Shown here: in pieces, positions 1,229-36,372 of the stretch
Layout of the letters: the number at the start of each line of letters is the position of its first letter
How positions within the stretch are numbered: the first letter of the stretch is position 1
DNA from: Guillardia theta CCMP2712
Taxonomy: Eukaryota > Protista > Cryptophyta
Direction of reading: 5' to 3'
Assembly (NCBI RefSeq): GCF_000315625.1
Contig: NW_005434666.1
Span: forward strand, 419,877 to 483,876
Length of the DNA: 64,000 bases
The notes under the pieces: generated by a model
The model's database searches: none
What the model was told of the DNA's origin: nothing
What the model saw: the letters and a program-made list of their open reading frames with translations, nothing else
Made by a program: the position numbers and the translations under genes

Positions 1229-1330
1229 GACGCATGCTGCTAGACCTTCTTATTTACAAGCCTTTCCTCCCCTCCCCCGCCCCCCCCCCCGCCCCCTCCT
1301 ACTCCTCTTCGACTATATCACTCTCCGATA

Positions 1331-4300
1331 TCATGCAAGCCCGATAAACGGCTGCTCCATCCCTGATGCTCTCCCCTGCCTTCCTTCATCCTCCTCCTCC
1401 ATGGCTCTCATCCCTTGTTCGATCATCTGCACTTCCTGGAAGACCAGCTCCGCGTAGACCTCCGGCAGCTCGGGGGCTGTCGGGTGAGGGATAGTCTGCA
1501 TCTCTACAAGCCCGTCAGTTGCTCCCTCACATCAAACCTCCTCCTCCTCCTCCTCCTCACCCACGGCTCCGCGTAGGTGGACCTGTACGGCTGTTAGTTG
1601 TGCCTCCTCCCTCTCTAACTTCTGCTACTCCTCCCCACTCCCTCACCCGCTCGCCCGTCGAGACTTCTTTTCGCCAGTACCTGATCGTTTGTCAACCCTA
1701 AGGTTGTATAGATAGGCAAGGGAGGAGCAAGGGAGGAAGAGCCAGAGCCAGAGCCAGAGGATAGGGGAAGGAGGGAGGAGAAAGACTGACCTGAGAAGCC
1801 AAAAGGAAGCGAAGGAGCAGATAAAGATAGCGACTCCTACGATTATCTCGACTATCAAGGGCACAGGAAGTTTATTTGACGGGTCCTGAGCCAATGTGAA
1901 GAGTTGAAGGATCGAGAGACGGGCGAGGAAGTGGATAAGGGAGGAAGAGGCAAGCAATCGAGAAGGATAATCAAGAGATGGGAAAAGGGGAAGACACAAC
2001 GAGGATGAGAAGCAATCGGAACAGGACAAGGAGCGGCAAGACAAGAACGATGAAGACTAGGACAAGGAGGAGAAGTAGAAGGCTGGCAACGAGAAAGAGA
2101 AGGAGAAAAATTGAAACAAAGAGAAAACTTGAAGTGTTGTTGGTGAGGAGCAGGAGACCGGAGTCGTAGTCACGACGGGAGTTCCTGTCTCCTCCGGGAA
2201 GACGATCTTCAAGAACGGGCTGACAAGAAGCCGGACAGGAGGAAAGCCCTGTGAACGCGGGGAGACGGTCAGTGAGGGAGAGGGAGAGGGAGAGGGAGAG
2301 GGAGAGGGAGAGGGAGAGGGAGAGGGAGAGGGAGAGGGAGAGAGAGAGAGGGAGAGGGAGAGGTGGACCTGCTGTGCCAGAGCATCGTTAATCCTTTGAA
2401 GAGAAAGAAGTGGGATCAAGTCTAGGCGCTCCTTGCCCAAGAGAACAGCAACGACGACCTGCGTCCTGTCGTTGTTGGCCGGGTCTGTGCTCGGGTCCAG
2501 AGAGCGACGAGGAGAGGAGGGGGAAGGGGAAAACGCTGTGGTGGCGATGGAAGAGACAGACGAGCTCTCCAGCAGCCTGCTGGCTGTCAGAAGAGAGGAG
2601 GACGGCAAGGATGAGAAACTCACAGGATCTTGTCGAGGGGCCAGGATGCGACTTGAGAGATAGCGGAGCGGAAGGTGAGAGAAGAATTCAGGAATTTGGA
2701 GAGGGGCATTTCCATCGAGACTACGAAGACGATTGTGTTCTCCTGCAGCTGCTGCATCGCTGAGCCCAAGCAGGAGGACACATCCTCCTGACAAGCATGA
2801 CAGTCACCTTCGCTCTGGTCCCTGCAGTCCGTCCGGAACATCCCCTCCGGACAGTCGTCGCACTTCCTGCACTCTCCCTCGCTCGCTCCCCCACACCCGT
2901 CCCGGTGCTCTCCTGGAGGACAGCTGGCGCATGCCTGGCAAGTAGCACCTGCCTTGCAGGAGGAGGCAAACTGCCCAGCTGGGCAGGGGGAGCAATTGAG
3001 AGGCCGCCGATCGAGCTCGACGAGGATGCTGCAGTTGGAGGCACCAACAGAAGCCACTGCGAGGACCCACGCTCCTGTGCCGGGGAGGGTCACGCTGGAG
3101 AAAGTGAGAAGGGGAGAGGAGGAGAGGAGCTCGATCTTAGCACTGAAGTCGTTCGGGGACGGCACCTTGTCGCGATGCAGGAAGACCCGACACACCTGGC
3201 GGCCTTGCGGAGGGTTGACGGTGAGGAACCAGTCTCTCTGCTGACTTGTCGTGTTCCACCAGGAGAAGGATCGGGAAGTTTGAAGGACGGAGATTTGGTT
3301 GACTCCCTCCTGCAGCAGAGGTATCCGGCCGCTGCAGTCCGAACCCAAGTAGGGGAAGTCGCAAACGCAGATCCCCTTCCGACAATCCCCATGACCGTGG
3401 CAGCCAGACGGGCAGGAGGGATAAGGACAGGGAGAAACCTCAGTCAAGTTCCCAGAGACAACAAGCGAGAAGTTCTGCCGCGGAGTCCGCATCCTGAGGG
3501 CAGAGACCATCACCTTGTAGGTAGCCGACACTTGAGGGGAGGAGACGACAACCTGTCAAACACAACAAACAGTGAGCTCGCCTCCTCCCCTTTCCACCTC
3601 CAAGCTATCTCTTCCATTGCTCTCACTCCACCTCCCGTTGCAACTCGCATTCCTCCTACGTCACCTTCTCGTTGTTGTTCACGTCGTCTTGCGCCCGAAG
3701 GACGTCTCCGCCCTCTTCCTTCCACATGATTCCATTCCCGCACATCTCCTCTCCGCCATGTCGCACAATTAGGTCGAGATCGCTCACGAGGAGGTTCTCA
3801 GCTGATGGCGGGTCTGTCCACACCAGCGTCACAGTAAGCGGCTCGTTGGCTCCCTTGACAAAGAAGCATCGAATCGCCACTCCTCCTCGGTCGATGGTGA
3901 CGTCATCAAGGAGGAAGAGCGAGGGTCCATCCCGCGCTCGGTACATGCTGAAGACGTTGACTGCCCCGTGTCCCTGACGACAGTTGGGAGGACAGGCGCT
4001 GAGAGCTTGCGCGTCATCTTGGAAGTCTTGTGCTGCATGAAGGAGGATGGCCTTGACGAGTGAAGCGCTCCCCGTAAACTTCTCATCTTTGACTTGCTGT
4101 CGTATCAGGGCAGCGGTGGCAGAAACGAGCGCAGCTGACAGATGCGCTCCATCGTCCTCCACGACCGCGTCTTTCCCGCACTCGAACGATGTCAAATCGG
4201 CGTCTGACTCCGCTGCCTCGATGGAGATGCCAGGAGCAAAGACTTCTGGCTTGATCTGCCCGTCCCCCACAGGGCCAGTGGAAGAGAACGGAGCGATCTG

Positions 4301-6257
4301 CTTGTCGAAGGAGGCAGTGAAGGGGAGAGAGGCAGTCACTCCTGTGCTCTCCTCCAACAGGCTTATGTCATTTTGACGGAGGTCAACCGTCGCCAAGAGG
4401 AAGCTCGAGTTTGTCAGCAGAGCAGTGACCAGGGAGCAAGGGACCTGCCCCATCCGCCGATCCAGCAGGACAGCATCAGGTCTTGCTGCTTTCAGGCTTC
4501 CCAATAGAACCTTCCAGTATTCCAGCGTCGCAGCACAATGACCTGAGAACCCGACGACAACCACGGACCCTGAAATCGCAGTAACATGCTCATCCGGACA
4601 GAACACTTCGTCCTCTAGAAAGGCTACCCTCCCCGTTATCTGGAGATCGGAGGTTGACTCCGGCAAGGGAAAACACGCAGCCATCCACATCGTGACCATC
4701 AGGTGGAAGTCAGGGGAAGAGAAGTGGACTTGGAAGACATCCTGTTGAGGCTGGATCACCTCGGTAAATTGATAAGCTCCAATTGTCAAGGCATTTTTGG
4801 CGAGGCCAAGGGGGTTGTTTTTCAGTTTGTTCCCAGCGCCAGCCACCACCACCAGGTAATCAGGGTGCGAGAACACGAAAGCATCTAGATCAGTGACATT
4901 GACTTGCTTTGCAAGATTGATGTCATCCCAGGCAATCACATGCACACGGGCTCCAATCTCATGGGAGGTCTGCAACAGACTCGCTCCCACATGCAAAGGG
5001 TAGTGATAGGTTATAGGTGAAGTATCGTCGGATATGTCCTGAATGAACAATCTGCTTGCGGGAGCCAGCCCGATATTGATCACTGGAGCCTCGGGACCCT
5101 CAACTAAGGAACTACCGCTGATGCATCCGCACATCTCTGTCCCTCTCCCCTGGAAGCTGTCTCCTATTTTGGCATTGGGCAAGAGCTCGTACCCAACTAC
5201 TTTGCGATGATCTCGGTTGATTTGTTTGATGCAAGAAGCGTGCGAAGTGCAAGCAGAGACGTCGCTTGTAGGGTCTTTGAACAGACAGTTGTCATAGTCC
5301 AGCCCTGAGTCAGATACGGTGATGATTTCTTCCTGGCCGAACCGCTCCATCGTGTACATTCCCTGAAGCCCCAATAATAAGATCTCCGTTGCGACTAGAT
5401 CTTCTAGGAAGCGACCTGCACTTCTCGATCTTCTCGAGCCAGAAACTGCCTGCGAATCTACTTTGACGTTGCGGTTCAGCTTTCTCATTGAAATCACATC
5501 GTTGAAGCCTGCAACCTCCTTCAGAAACTGCGTGCTATGACTTGTGCAAACTATTGCCCGAACCTGGAGAGGACTGGTTAGGCTTTTGCTACACAGGCAG
5601 TTTCAACCACATTCATAAGATCACCTCATGATTGGATATGTGCTCTAGCGTGAGCTGTCTTTCGAGTGACAAGCTTTCAACGATTTTCTGACTCCATGCG
5701 AGCACAGTCTCTTTGGCGTACGAATGACCGAGGGAAACCACAAACTGATCAATGTCTGGCTGTTCCGAGGTGCAATGAAGGCTCGTCGCAAGATTGGTCC
5801 GCTCCTCTCGTGAAGAGCTCCTCACTGATTCAGCTGCTTCAACAGGAGTGCTGTATCCTCTGACGGGTGTAGCGCTCACAAAACCGGTGAGCTGTCGCAC
5901 ACGGTCAAGATCAACTGTTGGCATAAAGCAAACCCTGCAATCGCAACGAACATTCAATTCACCATCAAGTTTGGAGAGCTCCTCCTGCAGGCTGGTTTTA
6001 TACTCCTCGTTGCATCGAATCGTGTACATCTTCCAGCCAGGCCATCCGTTCTCGACGAGCGATCTGATGTGATAGTCCGACATTGACATCTTTGCCCCTG
6101 AGCTATGCTCAACGTATACAGCGTTGCCGGACGCAAGTCGCTCTGCACTGGCTGCGACACTTGAAACGGATGCTGCCATGCCGCCCTCAGGCTCGCTGTT
6201 GTCAGCATTACACAGCACCAGCAGCAGCCCCACGATCTGCCATGCCCGCATCTTCAT
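1331..6257 (-). CDS. Type-I membrane subtilisin-like (S8, TagC/Kp43-like) protein, probably inactive: signal peptide, prodomain, S8 with PA-like insert, EGF, TNFR-like Cys repeats, SEA-like domain, TM, PTAP tail
   Basis: Built from ORFs 5613-6332, 3656-5497 and 2620-3531 plus small 3' exons. Motifs: signal MKMRAWQIVGLLLVLC; VSDSGLD; AKNALTIGA; FSSTGPVGDGQIKPEVFAPG; QGHGAVN; VTLVWTDPP..DLDL; NNNEKV; EGF CPSGCHGHGDCRKGICVCDFPYLGSDCS; TM LIVEIIVGVAIFICSFASFWLL; tail ...PHPTAPELP...FIGLA* (stop 1331-1333). Confidence 0.85.
2274..2362. repeat. (GAGAGG)n intronic microsatellite
   Basis: Hexamer array within an intron of the subtilase gene. Confidence 0.85.
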
Positions 6258-31204: not shown

Positions 31205-32531
31205 ATGGCGACGTTCAAGATGAGGAATGCCTGCGCCTTTCCCTCCTCCTCCTCCCTCCTCCTCCTCCTTCTCCTCCTCCTTACGTCATCAACATTTATC
31301 GAGTGCTCTCAAGCACCTGCTAGACATCTAAAGCACTTGAACACAGGCAACGTTTTAAAGCGAAGAAGTTCATTTGCAGTGTTGGACAGCTATGATCACG
31401 ACGATGATCACGACGATGATCACGACGATGATCACGACGATGACGATGATGACATAGATCACGATCATGGAGGAACAGGAGGGTCGGATGATGACGATGT
31501 ACCAGCTTCACCAGCTCCATCACCAGCTCCATCACCAGCTCCATCACCAGCACCCACTCCAGCTTCACCGGCACCCACTCCAGCTTCGCCAGCACCTACT
31601 CCAGCTTCGCCAGCACCTACTCCAGCTTCGCCAGCACCCACTCCAGCTTCGCCAGCACCCACTCCAGCTTCGCCAGCTCCAACGCCAGCAACGCCAGCTC
31701 CCTCGCCAACAACCTCAACTCCAGGTCCTAATCAAATAAGCACACAAAGCACAAGTTCGAACGTAGCGAACCTAGCTGTTTCTTTGCCGCTGACTTTGAA
31801 CGACTTCAATTCTGATGCTCAATCAAACTTCAAAAAAGCCGTCGCTGCATCGGCTGGCACATCCATCTCCTCTGTGATCATAACTGGCATCACCGTCCTG
31901 ACAACACGTCGCCGATTGTTATCTGCATCGATTCTTGTCCATTTCAGCATTTTAGCAAAGGATGCGCAGCAGGCGACAGACATCAAAAATAGTTTTTCTG
32001 TGGACTCGTTGAATAAGGAGCTCATCAAGAATGGATTGCCTCAGGCTTCGATACAGATTGTGAAGCCAAGTACAGGAGCATCCGACAACACATACTTGGT
32101 GAGCCGCCTTACATGTCTATTTTGAACTCTGATATAGAACAGTACGTCGGAATTGGTGGAGGGATACTCTTTGCTGGAATTATGGGAATGGGTCTATGGA
32201 GAAGACTGAGGAAGAATCGGGTAGAGCTTTTCTTGTATTGCTATTCCCTCTCATCTTGGGCGAGTTTCCTGGCCTTGCTCTTATTGTAACTTTGCAGGTA
32301 AAGACTCTTGCAAGAGAAGTGAGACCCGAGACCTTCGGCTCAGGAATTTGTGAGTGGCAAATTACTGTGAACGAAAGTTCATCAGAAACTGACTTGAGTT
32401 GCCATGGTTTTCCAGTGGTCATTCCCACAGATGGAAAGTTGCCTACTCCCAGCGCCCCTCCCTTGACTGTTCTGCATGGAGAATATGATCCTGAAGACAG
32501 AGACGAGTATTTCGCCAATTATTTTCCTTAA
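31205..32531 (+). CDS. Mucin-like type-I membrane protein 1: signal peptide, (DHDD)n, (PASPAPT)n, SEA-like RRRLL domain, TM, PSAP tail
   Basis: ORF 31205-32125, then intron to TM YVGIGGGILFAGIMGMGLWRR; last exon LVIPTDGKLPTPSAPPL...EYFANYFP* (32531). Confidence 0.85.
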
Positions 32532-32984
32532 GAGTGATGCGGCCAAGTAACTATGATGGCTTGGGCCGCCACTGATGTCCCCGCCAGCCCAATCATGTTG
32601 CGGGTTCAAGTAGTGAGTAGAGAATGTCGTTCCGTTTCCGTACTGTGAATGTATATTATCATATAGTAGTGTAGACCTGCCAGTAGATTTACTTGTCCCT
32701 CTCACCACCAGAGCACAAATCCTTCAAGTGATACGATTGCAAGATGCCGTCTGTAGTTTTAAATGCTATTAGAAATTGTACCTGAGTTTTATTTTAAAAA
32801 GAGTCTATTACATTATTATGTTTTATCTCTATCAGTGACAGTCACAGGTACCCTGCTTCCTACCCATCGATGACCCCCCAACTTCTCTACATTCGGACCC
32901 CACCAATCGAGAGGTATACCTACCTACTGTTTGCAGGTGTCGTAGACCCCACCACAGCGTGGTTCACCCCGCCAGGAAGACTGG

Positions 32985-34665
32985 ATGCAGATGGGCGCTA
33001 AGGCAGGGCGTCAACGCCGCTTGAGTATCCTCATCCTCGCCGTGATTGCCATCACGAACAGCTCCTACCTTGTTGGTCAGGCCTCGGCTTCTCTCACCTT
33101 GCGTTTGCCACATAGATCACACTTTTCTCCTCCATTTTCAGTCCGCGACTCCGGTAAGAACGCCTGAGCCGTCTTGATCGTTTGATGCAAAATCTCACCG
33201 TTGGTGCAAATTCAGACTCCGAGGAGTCAGAGGAAGACGAGGCGTCAGAGGCAGAGTCTACATACAGTACTTCCCCTGCTGATACCGCTGTTGCCACGAC
33301 CCCTCTTCCCCAAGGTTTTTAAAGTACCTGTTTCGGCGTTGTTTGACAGAGTTGTTTTAGAATCGGATAATGCTGACACGAACCATGAGCAACAAAACAA
33401 TGTTGTTCAGTCGTCTAAACCAGCTGAAGGGAGATCAACCACTTCTCAGATGACGTCAAGCACTTCCCCAATGCTACAACACACAGCTTCGATTCAGGCT
33501 GAAAGCACTCGAGGAAAGCTAGATGAGGTCGGTACCAGTACACCGTCACCATCCTCGCAAGAACCAACAACAGGTGTGTGGTGAAGAAGTGCGGATTAAC
33601 CACAGAGAAGTTGAATCTTTGACGATCCTTTGTCAGATTCAGTGCCGGATAACGGAGACAAGCAAGACGGGATCGATTCCTCTACTTCTGTAGGGTCAAG
33701 CCAGCCCATGGGAGGTGATAACAATAAATTACCAGGCAGCACATCAAGCCCAGGTGCACTCGTTTCTTAATTGTTCGATAGTTTCTGATAGGAGGCTTGA
33801 CAGATGGCGCAGGGAAGAAGCAAACTCAAGCACCTTCAAATCTCATTTCCACCACGCCAGTGATGCAACAGAATCAAGTTTACTTGTATGATGTAAAGCT
33901 GGAAGTGACGCTGCCGATGTCTGCCCAACAATTTGGAGCTCAAGAAAGGAGAGCATTCATGGATGCAGTTGCTCGGACTGCTAAAGTTCAACCATCGCAG
34001 GTTTCGATTACAAATGTGATCTCGAATCGACGAGGGTCTAGAAAGCTGCTGGCAACAAATTCACTTACCATTGAATGCACTATCAAAGTGTCAGAACCGA
34101 ATGCAGTCACACGGATAACAAAGGACATGACAATCGCTTCACTGAACCAAGAGCTAGCCCGTGGTGGTTTACCTCAGTCCTCGTCAGTTGCCGTCGTTTC
34201 CAAGAGCTCGACCTCGAACGGGTCCTCAGATACTTACTTGCTGGTTATTCAGAATTTATACAATGTTGCCTATCTGACTCTTTTTGACAGATCGGATGCT
34301 GCATTGGGGGAGGATTCTCCCTGATTTTGTTTTGTTTGATCACCAGGAAAATGCAAAGATGCACGAAGGTTTGTCTTGTCTCGTTTTCGTTTTTGTGAAA
34401 AATTCTGATGATTGGGATTCAAGGCACGTAGAGACACTTTCACGTACTTAGGTACGATCTATAGCTATGTATTTCTTGTTCGTCTCCTCACAGGTACGCA
34501 GGTACACCCGACCCTCCACCTACGGCTCCGCCAATGCCACTCAGCAATGAATCCACCGTCGATAGCATCGAAGAGGAAGAAGACATTCCACCTCCCCCCC
34601 CACTACCATCAAATGATTCTCATCTCTGCTTCGTGCAAGATGGCAAACAGAAACATTATTACTAG
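32985..34665 (+). CDS. Mucin-like type-I membrane protein 2: signal peptide, S/T-rich stalk, SEA-like RKLL domain, TM, PTAP tail
   Basis: Signal LSILILAVIAITNSS; VKLEVTLPMSAQQFGAQERRAFMDAVARTA...SRKLLATNSLTIE...LNQELARGGLP; TM IGCCIGGGFSLILFCLI; tail DPPPTAPPMP...KHYY* (TAG 34663-34665). Confidence 0.82.
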
Positions 34666-34806
34666 GCATGTTTGGAACGTGCTCTGGTAGTCGGATAAGC
34701 CTGTATTTTTAATCCCGGCTCATTGTACGGTCCCGCCGCCGGTCACTCTGAGCCGGTCGGCCTGGCGGGCCCCGCTCCGCACATATTTCGATCATCACGA
34801 ACTTGT

Positions 34807-34845
34807 AAGTAGTAGTAGCAGTAGTAGTAGTAGTAGTAGTAGTAG
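34807..34845. repeat. (AGT)n microsatellite
   Basis: agtagtagtagcagtagtagtagt... between convergent paralogs 2 and 3. Confidence 0.85.
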
Positions 34846-35138
34846 AGCTAGAACGGCCAATGGTAAGCTCTTTGGATAGCAACCCTCTTTGATTCAGTTT
34901 GAAATAAATTCTCCTCCCCGAAGTTGTAAATAAAGTATAGTGTTACTTGAGACTCGAAGGAGACAACAGTACCGCGCAGGAATTCATACAGTGCACTAGT
35001 TTGTTCCAGAGTATAGGTTCCAGAGTATAGTTTGTGTACGTACAAAAGTGACGAGCAAGATAAAAATATGTGACAACTTTTGGATAACAAAAGGAATTTC
35101 ATTAAGAAAAATAGACTAGACATACTACATGGAGTTCC

Positions 35139-36372
35139 TCATGGGCAAACAGTTGCGAGAGGAATTTGCGGTTGTCCATATCGCTGGAACACAGGCGGAG
35201 GAGGAGGAGGTGCTGTCGGTTGAGGGAATTTCGAATCCAAAGTCACCACTGCAGCAGTGTAAGACGGTGTTTTAAAGTCATTTTGATCTTACAAGAGGCA
35301 TGGCCGTTACTCGAGATGTGCACATCATCGTTTGACTTCCGCTGCCGAAGGTAATCAGACGAAATCTTACATGCGATCAGTATTTTTCTCACCTTCTTGC
35401 GCGAGAGCATGCAAATAACACAAATCATAAAGCCGAGCAAGACTACTCCACCGGCAATAATGCCAATCTGGCAACATATCAGTCCTTGGATATTCGCAGC
35501 GCTTTAGAAATACCAATATTGGTGTTGTAATTGTGAAAGGCGATGAAGATGAGTTTGGGTTCGAAACTGATGGAAGATTCTGCAGAATCAGCTCTTCATT
35601 GAGCTTCTTCAAGGGGAAATTCGTTGCAATCTCCTGTTGGAGAGAAGAATTTTGAAATTGAATCGAGAAATCTACCAAGCTAGATGTGCTGCTGCGTCTT
35701 GCCAACATGGCACGTACAGAGGTGATATTCACGTCAGACACTGAGGTGCCAGTTGACAAGGCAACAGCCTGTTTGAAGCTCATCCTCTTTGCTGCACCAA
35801 AGTTCTGGGGTGGAATCTGCATGAGCACCGCAAACTCGAGCACATCAGCTGAGACTTTTTTCGGTTGCAACGGAGTACTGGATGTTTGACTTGAACTGGA
35901 CGAGGTAGTTGATGGGCTCGGAGAGTTGGATTGAGTTGCTGGAGAGCCAGTCGAAGCGGAAGATGTGGGAGAGGAAGGCGAGTAAGAGGGTGAGGTAGGA
36001 GCTGGAGCTGGAGCTGGAGGAGCTGGAGCAGGTGAAGGAGGAGCTGGAGCAGGTGCGGGAGGAGAGGAAGAATGGTCGCCATGATCACTGTCACTGGAAA
36101 CATGCGATGAGTCGTTGGATTCGTAACTCTCTCCGCTGTCTCTGAGTCTAGTCACTCGTGCGATCTTCTTGCGTTCCAAGCTACCTGCTCAACAGATTCA
36201 ACAAAGTGTTGAAGTTGTGAATAACAATCTCACCGTTGAAAATGAGGTTTCCTAATCTCCGCTGCTTTGTTAACCCAAGCGTCCGGTCTGCTGGTTGACA
36301 TACACCCAGAAGGAAATGAAGAAGGATCATGACCATTGCAACTTCTGATCTGACTGTCAAAGATTGTGCCAT
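35139..36372 (-). CDS. Mucin-like type-I membrane protein 3: signal peptide, D/H/S-rich segment, (PA)n/S-T stalk, SEA-like domain, TM, PTAP tail
   Basis: Signal VAMVMILLHFLLGVC; LEFAVLMQIPPQNFGAAKRMSFKQAVALSTGTSVSDVNITSVRAMLARRSSTSSLVDFSI...LNEELILQNLP; TM IGIIAGGVVLLGFMICVICML; tail LVTLDSKFPQPTAPPPPP...TVCP* (35139-35141). Confidence 0.85.

What the first reader, a model, noticed from the sequence alone, without database searches (positions are those of the whole stretch)
1331..2735. The subtilase about 25-30 kb away carries the same SEA-like / TM / PTAP cassette: a shuffled C-terminal module
Seen: after its Cys-rich region the subtilase reads IVFVVSMEMPLSKFLNSSLTFRSAISQVASWPLDKIL...SPRRSL...TQVVVAV...LSLQRINDALAQQGFPP, matching the domain of the three mucins. 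A TM follows, then a tail spliced through a phase-1 intron to EMQTIPHPTAPELP (PTAP at 1472-1483), the same intron phase and placement as in mucin genes 1 and 3. Inference: the cassette is a portable 'anchor, cleave, ESCRT-sort' module grafted onto unrelated ectodomains by exon shuffling.
Basis: partly seen in the sequence, partly recalled or inferred. Interest (0 to 1): 0.75.

Follow-up and report, generated by a model that had tools for sequence, protein, structure and literature searches.

The report
Membrane-anchor cassette on an algal pseudo-subtilase
A catalytically dead subtilase gene of the alga Guillardia theta ends in the same kind of membrane-adjacent domain, membrane anchor and PTAP-bearing tail as three nearby mucin-like genes, but it got them from an old family of membrane subtilases, not by a recent graft, and the proposed cleavage and ESCRT sorting are untested.

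Summary
The window is Guillardia theta CCMP2712, and the gene is GUITHDRAFT_101694 (XP_005839505.1).

- **Domain:** its C-terminus is a divergent copy of an unnamed ~95-residue juxtamembrane domain. A profile of 26 genome paralogues gives 22 bits, E 1.7e-4; hhalign gives E 6.7e-6; no shuffle out of 2000 comes near.
- **Anchor and tail:** an in-frame TM exon, two tiny exons and a tail exon follow. The tail exon sits behind a phase-1 intron and carries PTAP at 1472-1483.
- **Public model:** it skips the TM exon. Two paralogous subtilases (contigs C29 and C3) share all seven C-terminal exons with identical intron phases, so the TM path is probably the real one.
- **Fold:** the domain family folds as beta-alpha-beta-beta-alpha-beta and resembles SEA/MAD/FBox domains only at fold level (Z 5-9). 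It has no Pfam match.
- **Spread:** the domain follows LRR, Cys-rich, kinase-receptor, mucin and subtilase ectodomains in at least 30 genes, so it is portable.

The graft reading is weak. Subtilase plus domain plus TM also occurs in a fourth G. theta gene and on an environmental contig. The subtilase domain is only 13-17% identical to the mucin domains. No intron marks the module's 5' edge in this gene. Only the tail links subtilases to mucins: the PxP(S/T)AP motif, a 3n+1 micro-exon and a phase-1 intron.

Cleavage and ESCRT docking remain untested. The scan had already described this domain and tail motif for the mucin trio (s1-445537).

The parts
3656..5497 (-). Subtilase (Peptidase_S8) exon, catalytically dead: His to Arg and Ser to His
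   Evidence: Pfam PF00082, E 1.1e-16. The alignment to the active C29 paralogue shows GHGTH against GRGTE and SGTSMAAP against DGAHLSAA. The Hanusia phi orthologue P0002 has the same substitutions.
2734..3546 (-). Upstream part of the large exon: EGF-like module, beta-rich region and Cys-rich (TNFR/ephrin-receptor-like) repeats
   Evidence: Pfam EGF_2, E 0.001. UniRef names the protein 'TNFR-Cys domain-containing'. The region is homologous to the C29 and C3 paralogues.
2624..2733 (-). Juxtamembrane domain, part 1 (beta1-alpha1), ending at a phase-2 intron
   Evidence: HMM positions 2-36; fourth-best fragment of 2778 in the window. Aligned. The paralogues have an intron at the same position and phase.
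2369..2576 (-). Juxtamembrane domain, part 2 (beta2, long Ser/Pro loop with RRSL, beta3, alpha2), ending at a phase-0 intron
   Evidence: HMM positions 45-88. The join is as in the public model P0004.
2498..2509 (-). RRSL: the family's near-invariant Arg-Arg in the beta2-beta3 loop
   Evidence: R48 is at least 90% conserved in A2. hhalign pairs RRSL with the mucin's RRRLL. The loop has lower pLDDT in the model.
2129..2248 (-). Juxtamembrane domain, part 3 (GFPP plus beta4) and a Thr/Ser/Pro linker
   Evidence: HMM positions 87-95. The long form ending at 2129 joins the TM exon in phase 0. The public model instead ends this exon at 2159.
1791..1885 (-). TM exon (a hydrophobic helix of about 22 residues), omitted from the public gene model
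   Evidence: Canonical AG/GT sites, in frame on both sides. The C29 and C3 paralogues have a TM exon at the same place and phase. The mucins and the environmental homologues have a TM right after the domain.
1647..1680 (-). Micro-exon 1 (34 nt): basic stop-transfer stretch (R-YWRKEVSTGER), omitted from the public model
   Evidence: Phase 2 to 0. The paralogues have a basic exon at the same place.
1561..1582 (-). Micro-exon 2 (22 nt = 3n+1), read VHLRGAV
   Evidence: Present in public model P0004. The paralogues have 25-nt exons here; the mucins have 52, 28 and 49 nt, all 3n+1.
1331..1503 (-). Tail exon behind a phase-1 intron: (E)MQ..PHPTAPELPEVYAEL.., acidic end, stop codon
   Evidence: Same frame as the public model. 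The tail exons of C29 and C3 also begin with EMQ and carry PIPTAPPL and PAPSAPPL.
1472..1483 (-). PTAP motif
   Evidence: Pattern search. PxP(S/T)AP is present in all six tails: three subtilases and three mucins.
1445..1456 (-). YAEL, a Yxx-hydrophobic motif five residues after PTAP
   Evidence: Read from the sequence. The sorting-signal reading rests on my own knowledge and is untested.
31205..36372 (.). The three mucin-like genes used for comparison. Each has an unsplit domain, a TM exon, a 3n+1 micro-exon and a phase-1 tail exon with PxP(S/T)APP.

Best explanation
The gene is a type-I membrane pseudo-subtilase of Guillardia theta.

**Shown**
- After the dead S8 domain, an EGF-like module, a beta-rich region and Cys-rich repeats, it carries a divergent member of an unnamed, lineage-specific ~95-residue juxtamembrane domain.
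- In a family representative this domain folds as a beta-alpha-beta-beta-alpha-beta sandwich of the SEA/MAD/FBox kind, with a near-invariant Arg-Arg in the exposed beta2-beta3 loop.
- The same domain precedes the membrane anchor in at least 30 G. theta surface proteins with unrelated ectodomains.
- Three G. theta subtilase paralogues share an identical 7-exon C-terminal layout.

**Inferred from the conserved exon structure in those paralogues**
- A TM helix, a basic stop-transfer stretch and a short cytosolic tail with PxPTAP, YAEL and an acidic end follow the domain. The public model, which skips the TM exon, is then wrong or describes a soluble isoform.

**Inferred history**
- The subtilase-domain-TM arrangement is ancestral to a subfamily of membrane subtilases and reached this gene by whole-gene duplication.
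- Only the anchor-plus-tail part shows a specific tie to the neighbouring mucins: TM, a 3n+1 micro-exon, and a phase-1 tail exon with PxP(S/T)AP. That tie is either a swapped 3' cassette or a shared ancestral state.

**Inferred function, untested**
- The domain acts as a rigid membrane-proximal stalk.
- Its RR(x)L(L) loop may be cut by a kexin-like or S1P-like subtilase, much as furin cuts the SEA-like HD domain of Notch.
- The PxP(S/T)AP tail may dock the UEV domain of the alga's Vps23, sorting the anchored stub or the whole protein into ESCRT-dependent vesicles.
For: - **Identity:** P0004 is XP_005839505.1, GUITHDRAFT_101694.
- **Domain membership:**. The colinear exon hits rank 4 and 8 of 2778 fragments.
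- **Family size and partners:** 32 six-frame matches in the genome. Upstream domains are LRR, Ephrin_rec_like/TNFR and kinase receptors, with S8 again on C26.
- **Paralogues:** C29 is an active subtilase, 28% identical, E 9e-51, with the same NNNE(K/Q)V splice point. C3 was found. All three genes have C-terminal exon phases 2,0,0,2,0,1 and tails that start with EMQ. Paralogue exons hit the domain HMM at E 1e-7 to 1e-3.
- **Old architecture:** environmental proteins P0054, P0111 and P0098 hold EGF, beta-region, domain and TM in one ORF, and P0054 lies directly behind an S8+PA gene call.
- **Fold:** AF2 gives pLDDT 85 and pTM 0.76. Structural matches are CELSR1 FBox Z 8.7, PCDH15 MAD12 7.6, CDH23 MAD28 7.0, IA-2 6.6, Notch2 HD 5.8, ADGRG6 5.6, MUC16 SEA 5.3 and TMPRSS6 5.2. 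The FBox authors themselves relate FBox to MAD and SEA domains (PMC12038025).
- **Tail:** PxP(S/T)AP occurs in six of six tails but in almost none of the other family loci.
- **A reader for the motif exists:** UEV and Vps23_core lie on one strand at C109:78.1-79.4 kb.
- **RRLL precedent:** RRLL is a known S1P recognition site (PMC2685025).
Against: - I found no RNA or cDNA evidence for the C-terminal exons. The public model omits the TM exon, and the Hanusia transcript P0002 stops just after the catalytic domain.
- The window's copy is the most divergent family member. Exon by exon it is not significant, and significance rests on the public spliced protein.
- The fold was predicted for the mucin-1 domain, not for the subtilase's own copy.
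- Foldseek found nothing at E <= 0.001. Z values of 5-9 for a ferredoxin-like sandwich can reflect a common arrangement, and mitoribosomal and other unrelated chains score alongside.
- The window's loop reads RRSL, not RxLL. No cleavage and no Vps23 binding has been shown for any member.
- Matching two intron phases between the mucin and subtilase tails has a chance probability of about 1 in 9.
Confidence: 0.65

Rival explanations
1. A true 3' cassette swap (exon shuffling). The TM, micro-exon and PxP(S/T)AP tail, with or without the domain, moved between a mucin-type gene and the ancestor of the C8/C29/C3 subtilases, replacing an older anchor.
For: - The 3n+1 micro-exon followed by a phase-1 tail exon with PxP(S/T)AP occurs in both gene classes and in no other family locus examined.
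- A fourth subtilase (C26) has the domain but a different anchor, a TM2-domain ORF downstream. Anchors therefore differ within the subtilase group.
- The C29 and C3 paralogues have a phase-0 intron just before the domain exon.
- The mucins lie 25-30 kb from the window's subtilase.
Against: - The domains of the two classes are only 13-17% identical, lower than to other members.
- The introns inside the domain are not shared.
- The subtilases split the TM and basic stretch with an extra phase-2 intron.
- Beyond the 6-residue motif the tails are not alignable: tblastn and genome searches with the tail return only the query itself.
- The direction and timing of any transfer cannot be inferred.
Confidence: 0.2
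2. Convergence. The domain is simply the generic stalk of G. theta type-I proteins, and the short proline-rich PxP(S/T)AP motif arose independently in subtilases and mucins, or is a generic SH3/WW-type or unrelated proline motif. There is then no common cassette and no ESCRT role.
For: - The motif is only 6 residues long and sits in Pro-rich tails.
- Most family members lack it.
- Domain identity between the two classes is low.
- Nothing ties the motif to Vps23 beyond its resemblance to PTAP late domains.
Against: - Six of six tails carry PxP(S/T)AP, while the chance expectation per tail is below 1e-3 (my estimate from residue frequencies).
- The motif is kept across subtilase paralogues that are only about 28-47% identical.
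- The exon pattern around it is shared.
Confidence: 0.15
3. The public gene model is right. The protein is secreted without a TM helix, so the 'tail' is extracellular and its PTAP has no sorting role.
For: P0004 (XP_005839505.1) joins 2159 to 1582 in frame, skipping the TM exon. I found no RNA that contradicts it.
Against: - The skipped TM exon and basic micro-exon are open, flanked by canonical sites, and in frame on both sides.
- Both exons are matched, position and phase, in two paralogues.
- Environmental homologues have a TM directly after the domain within one ORF.
- The model is an automatic prediction.
Confidence: 0.1

Closest known systems
SEA domain and its divergent relatives (MAD of PCDH15/CDH23, Flamingo box of CELSR1, IA-2 ectodomain, Notch HD); Pei & Grishin 2017, as cited in PMC10327162; PMC12038025
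   Same: - A membrane-adjacent extracellular beta-alpha-beta-beta-alpha-beta sandwich of about 100 residues, placed just before a TM helix.
- Found on mucins, receptors and membrane proteases.
- The conserved loop lies between beta2 and beta3, where SEA domains autocleave.
- Some SEA domains, and the Notch HD, carry basic protease sites.
- These domains are the top structural matches.
   Different: - No sequence match to Pfam SEA or to any PDB chain.
- No G/SVVV autoproteolysis motif; an RR(x)L(L) loop sits there instead.
- Z is only 5-9, and Foldseek is not significant.
- Homology is not established.
Type II transmembrane serine proteases (enteropeptidase, matriptase, TMPRSS6)
   Same: A protease tethered to the membrane through a SEA-type juxtamembrane domain. 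TMPRSS6 appears among the structural matches (Z 5.2).
   Different: - Those are S1 (trypsin-like) proteases with type II orientation and an N-terminal anchor.
- Here the protease is an S8 subtilase with type I orientation and a C-terminal anchor.
- The window's copy lacks the catalytic His and Ser.
Membrane-bound subtilases: furin/PC5B, SKI-1/S1P, apicomplexan SUB2
   Same: Type-I S8 proteases with a Cys-rich or other spacer, one TM helix, and a short cytosolic tail carrying sorting motifs (my own knowledge).
   Different: - None of them is known to have this juxtamembrane domain or a PTAP tail.
- The G. theta genes add an EGF-like module and, in C29 and on the environmental contig, a PA domain.
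- Orthology to any of these was not tested.
P(T/S)AP late-domain motif read by Tsg101/Vps23 UEV (HIV-1 Gag p6, HRS, ARRDC1)
   Same: The PxP(S/T)APP core matches the PEPTAPP context of HIV-1 p6. The motif lies in a short, probably cytosolic tail. The genome encodes a Vps23 with a UEV domain.
   Different: Known carriers are viral structural proteins or soluble adaptors. A direct PTAP on the tail of surface cargo in an alga is not described in the papers I searched. Binding is untested.
The mucin-like trio of the same window (earlier finding s1-445537)
   Same: Same domain family, TM, 3n+1 micro-exon, and phase-1 tail exon with PxP(S/T)AP.
   Different: - The ectodomain differs.
- The mucin domains are unsplit, and 13-17% identical to the subtilase's.
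- The subtilases have two introns inside the domain and one more after the TM helix.

Membership tests
Unnamed G. theta juxtamembrane 'RR-loop' domain family (profile A2 / fam.hmm) | End-to-end match to the family profile | tested here: met
   HMM positions 2-95 of 103, 22.0 bits, E 1.7e-4 at Z=25000. hhalign E 6.7e-6. A segment scores 28.2 bits against at most 8.2 in 2000 shuffles.
Unnamed G. theta juxtamembrane 'RR-loop' domain family (profile A2 / fam.hmm) | Arg-Arg in the beta2-beta3 loop, and the C-terminal LN..L...G(L/F)P motif | tested here: met
   PRRSL and INDALAQQGFPP align to the conserved columns. The LL after RR, seen in about 40% of members, is absent here.
Unnamed G. theta juxtamembrane 'RR-loop' domain family (profile A2 / fam.hmm) | Lies directly N-terminal to a TM helix | tested here: inconclusive
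   An in-frame TM exon at 1885-1791, with conserved position and phase in two paralogues. The public model omits it, and no RNA was found.
SEA domain (Pfam PF01390) | Match to the Pfam SEA profile | tested here: not met
   No SEA hit at E <= 1 for the exons or for any of the 26 family members. The protein atlas lists a SEA cluster only at rank 10, score 0.78.
SEA domain (Pfam PF01390) | G/SVVV-type autoproteolysis motif in the beta2-beta3 turn | tested here: not met
   That loop holds RR(x)L(L) and, in the subtilase, a long Ser/Pro insert.
SEA domain (Pfam PF01390) | Alpha/beta sandwich fold similar to solved SEA domains | tested here: inconclusive
   The model (pLDDT 85) has beta-alpha-beta-beta-alpha-beta topology. 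Z is 8.7 to the CELSR1 FBox and 5.2-6.6 to IA-2, ADGRG6, MUC16 and TMPRSS6 SEA domains. Foldseek is not significant. The model is of the mucin-1 copy, not the subtilase's.
ESCRT-I P(T/S)AP docking motif | P-(T/S)-A-P core conserved among relatives | tested here: met
   PxP(S/T)AP is present in the three subtilase paralogues and the three mucins.
ESCRT-I P(T/S)AP docking motif | A UEV-bearing Vps23/Tsg101 in the same organism | tested here: met
   PF05743 at 108.7 bits and PF09454 at 36.4 bits, on the same strand of C109 within 1.2 kb.
ESCRT-I P(T/S)AP docking motif | Physical binding to UEV and ESCRT-dependent sorting | not testable with these tools
   Needs a binding assay and cell biology.
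Exon-shuffled module | Introns of compatible phase bounding the module in both donor and recipient | tested here: not met
   The window's gene has no intron at the 5' edge of the domain; it lies in one exon with the Cys-rich repeats. The mucins have none either. Only the C29 and C3 paralogues have a phase-0 intron there.
Exon-shuffled module | Shared intron positions and phases inside the module | tested here: inconclusive
   The phase-0 and phase-1 introns around the 3n+1 micro-exon are shared. The two introns inside the domain and the one after the TM helix are specific to the subtilases.
Peptidase S8 (subtilase) | Profile match and the Asp-His-Ser catalytic triad | tested here: not met
   The profile is matched (PF00082), but His is replaced by Arg and Ser by His. 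The protein has the S8 fold and is probably inactive.

The most novel reading that the evidence does not exclude
PxP(S/T)AP tails on cryptophyte surface proteins are genuine docking sites for the alga's Vps23 UEV domain. The RR(x)L(L) loop of the SEA-like stalk is a site for a membrane subtilase of the S1P or kexin type. Together they would form a 'cut the ectodomain, then ESCRT-sort the stub or bud it off' system, in which membrane subtilases (including a dead, decoy-like one) carry the same stalk and tail as their likely substrates. That would be a cellular use of the late-domain motif directly on cargo, outside animals and fungi.
Probability: 0.12. Interest if true: 0.75.

Novelty: new variant of a known kind. 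Interest (0 to 1): 0.42.

Why it matters
- **Gene model:** the public model GUITHDRAFT_101694 very probably lacks its membrane anchor.
- **Domain family:** the work helps define an unnamed, Pfam-less juxtamembrane domain that serves as the standard stalk of at least 30 G. theta surface proteins. The atlas lead suggests it also occurs in haptophytes and diatoms.
- **New architecture:** a subfamily of type-I membrane subtilases is tethered through a SEA-like stalk. This is a convergent counterpart of the animal type II serine proteases.
- **Testable biology:** if the RR loop and the PxP(S/T)AP tail work as proposed, regulated shedding and ESCRT-I cargo recognition become directly testable in a cryptophyte.

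As it stands, this is careful annotation plus an untested hypothesis, and the scan had already described the core of it (domain plus motif) for the mucin trio.

Tried and rejected
- **tblastn of the five C-terminal exon translations against the window:** no hit to the mucins below E 0.01.
- **Genome searches with single small exons (tail, domain part 2):** each returned only itself.
- **Word-index protein searches:**
  - The 303-aa exon found only an unrelated Cys-rich Hanusia protein, P0001.
  - The 613-aa exon found the Hanusia orthologue P0002, which stops just after the catalytic domain.
  - P0004 residues 850-1317 found only itself and a fish tenascin.
  - So there is no RNA-derived C-terminus and no public models of the paralogues.
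- **Cluster look-up of P0004:** a singleton cluster with no alternative isoform.
- **Annotation and structure searches:** Pfam on the exons and on all 26 family members, PDB by sequence, and Foldseek against PDB all gave nothing significant.
- **P(S/T)AP near L017 and L035:** rejected as out-of-frame noise.
- **My first reading of the 22-nt micro-exon (STYAEPW):** wrong. The in-frame reading is VHLRGAV.
  - Splicing was analysed exon by exon, by reference.
  - The only spliced sequence used was the public protein P0004.
  - The subtilase's own domain could not be folded: it is split over three exons, and P0004 exceeds the 1200-residue limit.
Full report
**Where we are.** The window is G000:C8:419877-483876 of an 87.1-Mb, 669-contig assembly. 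The gene's public protein, P0004, is EKX52525.1 / XP_005839505.1, 'hypothetical protein GUITHDRAFT_101694 [Guillardia theta CCMP2712]'. The organism is therefore the cryptophyte alga Guillardia theta. The gene lies on the minus strand from about 6332 to 1331.

**The observation.**
- My exon reading of the C-terminus:
  - domain part 1, 2733-2624, at the end of the large exon that also holds the EGF-like and Cys-rich regions;
  - part 2, 2576-2369;
  - part 3 plus linker, 2248-2129;
  - TM exon, 1885-1791;
  - basic micro-exon, 1680-1647;
  - 22-nt micro-exon, 1582-1561;
  - tail exon, 1503-1334, with the stop at 1333-1331.
- All sites are GT-AG, and the intron phases are 2,0,0,2,0,1.
- PTAP is at 1483-1472. 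The intron before the tail is phase 1, as claimed.
- The public model makes the same joins inside the domain and uses the same tail frame. It jumps from 2159 to 1582, dropping the TM exon and the basic micro-exon.

**Is the domain the mucins' domain?**
- Simple comparison fails: tblastn of the exons against the window finds nothing.
- I collected paralogues of the mucin-1 domain from the genome. There were 11 at first and then 32 six-frame matches. I built profiles from them: A1 with 11 sequences, and fam.hmm / A2 with 26.
- Exon by exon, the subtilase's part 1 is the best non-mucin fragment of 2778 in the window (7.7 bits, HMM 2-36). Part 2 ranks eighth (5.3 bits, HMM 45-88). The two hits are colinear but not significant alone.
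- On the public spliced protein the match is end to end and significant:
  - 22.0 bits, E 1.7e-4 for a proteome-sized search;
  - hhalign probability 85%, E 6.7e-6 over 92 columns;
  - 28.2 bits for the 150-residue segment, against a maximum of 8.2 in 2000 shuffles and 0.0 for the reversed sequence.
- The conserved RR, LN..L and G(L/F)P positions are kept. The beta2-beta3 loop is about 20 residues longer than usual.
- The domain claim stands. This copy is the most divergent one found.

**What the domain is.**
- No Pfam family matches any of the 26 members, and no PDB sequence does either.
- AlphaFold2 on the mucin-1 copy with the 26-row alignment gives pLDDT 85 and pTM 0.76. The topology is beta-alpha-beta-beta-alpha-beta, with the RR loop between beta2 and beta3.
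- Foldseek finds nothing at E <= 0.001.
- The exhaustive aligner puts membrane-adjacent ferredoxin-like domains at or near the top:
  - CELSR1 Flamingo box, Z 8.7;
  - a dystrophin-glycoprotein-complex chain, 8.1;
  - PCDH15 MAD12, 7.6;
  - a nuclear-pore chain, 7.4;
  - CDH23 MAD28, 7.0;
  - IA-2, 6.6;
  - Notch2 HD, 5.8;
  - ADGRG6, 5.6;
  - MUC16 SEA, 5.3;
  - TMPRSS6, 5.2.
- The CELSR1 authors relate the FBox to MAD, nucleoporin and SEA domains, and note that some SEA domains carry furin sites (PMC12038025). The 'divergent SEA' grouping is that of Pei & Grishin 2017, seen only as a citation in PMC10327162.
- Unrelated chains score similarly, and the tool warns that Z below 8 can mean only a common arrangement.
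- 'SEA-like' is therefore fair as a description of fold and position. It is not shown as homology, and the SEA autocleavage motif is absent.
- A protein-atlas look-up gives unnamed haptophyte and diatom clusters as the nearest look-alikes (0.92 and 0.85) and a SEA cluster only at 0.78. This is a lead, not evidence.

**Portability.** In G. theta the domain sits just before the membrane anchor, behind several kinds of ectodomain:
- LRR ectodomains (L022-L025);
- ephrin-receptor-like/TNFR Cys-rich ectodomains (L028, L031, L032, L035, L038);
- Cys-rich receptor kinases (L027, L029);
- EGF-bearing and unannotated proteins;
- the mucin trio;
- subtilases.

This supports 'portable module' for the domain. 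In nearly all these genes the domain shares an ORF with its ectodomain, so present-day introns do not mark the joins.

**The key result: the subtilase did not get the cassette alone.**
- One weak, split family hit (L040) turned out to belong to a second subtilase at C29:~700.6-705.5 kb (L043). It is an active one (GHGTH, SGTSMAAP), 28% identical to the window's, E 9e-51, and shares the splice point after NNNE(K/Q)V.
- A third subtilase lies on C3 (L056).
- All three share seven C-terminal exons with identical phases: domain A | B | C | TM | basic exon | 22- or 25-nt exon | tail. The tail begins (E)MQ and carries PHPTAPEL, PIPTAPPL or PAPSAPPL.
- The paralogues' domain exons hit the family HMM at E 1e-7 to 1e-3.
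- This conservation is the best available evidence that the TM exon and the first micro-exon of the window's gene are real.
- A fourth subtilase on C26 has an unsplit copy of the domain (E 9e-21), followed by an ORF with a TM2 domain instead of a PTAP tail.
- Among relatives from metagenomes, P0054, P0111 and P0098 hold EGF, beta-region, domain, TM and tail in one ORF. P0054 lies directly behind an S8+PA gene call on its contig.
- Subtilase-domain-TM is therefore an old architecture that reached this gene by duplication.

**What links subtilases and mucins specifically.**
- It is not the domain. The subtilase's copy is 13-17% identical to the three mucin copies and 24-28% identical to copies behind Cys-rich or LRR ectodomains.
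- The link is the anchor and tail. By my reading, each mucin has a TM-plus-basic exon (78, 78 or 75 nt, phase 0 to 0), then a 3n+1 micro-exon (52, 28 or 49 nt), then a phase-1 tail exon with PTPSAPPL, PPPTAPPM or PQPTAPPP.
- The subtilases have the same last two steps, plus one extra phase-2 intron after the TM helix.
- Of about 30 family loci, only these six have P(S/T)AP in a plausible tail within 1.5 kb.
- The tail evidence fits either a swapped 3' cassette or an ancestral state lost elsewhere. Matching two phases has a chance probability of about 1 in 9, and the motif is short, so I rate the swap at about 0.2.

**Mechanism.**
- Shown: the domain, its fold class in a representative, the conserved RR loop, and the conserved PxP(S/T)AP.
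- Also shown: the genome encodes Vps23 with UEV and core domains.
- Inferred: type-I topology, from a signal-like N-terminus in P0004, the TM exon and the basic stretch after it.
- Inferred: the tail is cytosolic.
- Speculative: cleavage at the RR loop. About 40% of members read R-x-L-L, and RRLL is a known site-1-protease motif (PMC2685025). The window's copy reads RRSL.
- Speculative: ESCRT-I docking. I found no paper on such motifs in cryptophytes.

**Limits.**
- There is no RNA for the C-terminus.
The TM-including model was neither searched nor folded, and the only spliced sequence used is the public protein.
- The subtilase's own domain was not folded.
- The genome survey is a lower bound, because split or divergent copies escape six-frame search.

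**Verdict.** A graft onto this gene by exon shuffling is unlikely, and cleavage and ESCRT sorting remain hypotheses. The scan had already reported the domain and the tail motif for the mucins (s1-445537). New here are:
- the subtilase subfamily with the conserved 7-exon cassette;
- the probable error in the public gene model;
- the evidence that the architecture is old.

Noticed in passing
window 3656-5497 (-): The subtilase is a pseudo-enzyme. The catalytic His is replaced by Arg (GRGTE) and the Ser by His (GAHLSAA), while Asp and the oxyanion Asn are kept. The Hanusia phi orthologue P0002 (62% identical) has the same changes, so the dead form is conserved and expressed in a sister genus.
   Followed up: partly
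window 1647-1885 (-): The public model XP_005839505.1 (GUITHDRAFT_101694) skips a TM exon and a 34-nt basic micro-exon that are conserved in two paralogues. It therefore predicts a soluble protein.
   Followed up: yes
G000:C29:671-705 kb (L027, L029, L043): The active paralogous subtilase on C29 lies within about 30 kb of two Cys-rich receptor kinases that carry the same juxtamembrane domain. This echoes the subtilase-mucin neighbourhood in the window.
   Followed up: no
L057 (G000:C26:11500-21400), minus strand 2667-6117: A fourth subtilase has an unsplit copy of the domain. It is followed by an ORF with a TM2 domain (PF05154) instead of a single TM helix plus PTAP tail.
   Followed up: partly
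L043:2551 (-): In my reading, domain exon B of the C29 paralogue ends at a GC donor (cag|gcaact), whereas the other two paralogues use GT there.
   Followed up: no
window 2290-2365 and about 905-965: A (CTCCCT)n microsatellite fills the intron between domain parts 2 and 3. A (GAGCGG)n run, about 905-965 and just downstream of the gene, reads as a Gly-Ser or Glu-Arg repeat.
   Followed up: no
L059 (ENA ERZ19395517, scaffold_14769) 1321-4484: An environmental contig carries an S8+PA gene call directly followed by an intron-free ORF with EGF, beta-region, the same juxtamembrane domain, a TM helix and a tail. The organism is unknown.
   Followed up: partly
window 1445-1456 (-): A YAEL (Yxx-hydrophobic) motif and an acidic stretch follow PTAP in the tail. 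They may be additional sorting signals.
   Followed up: no
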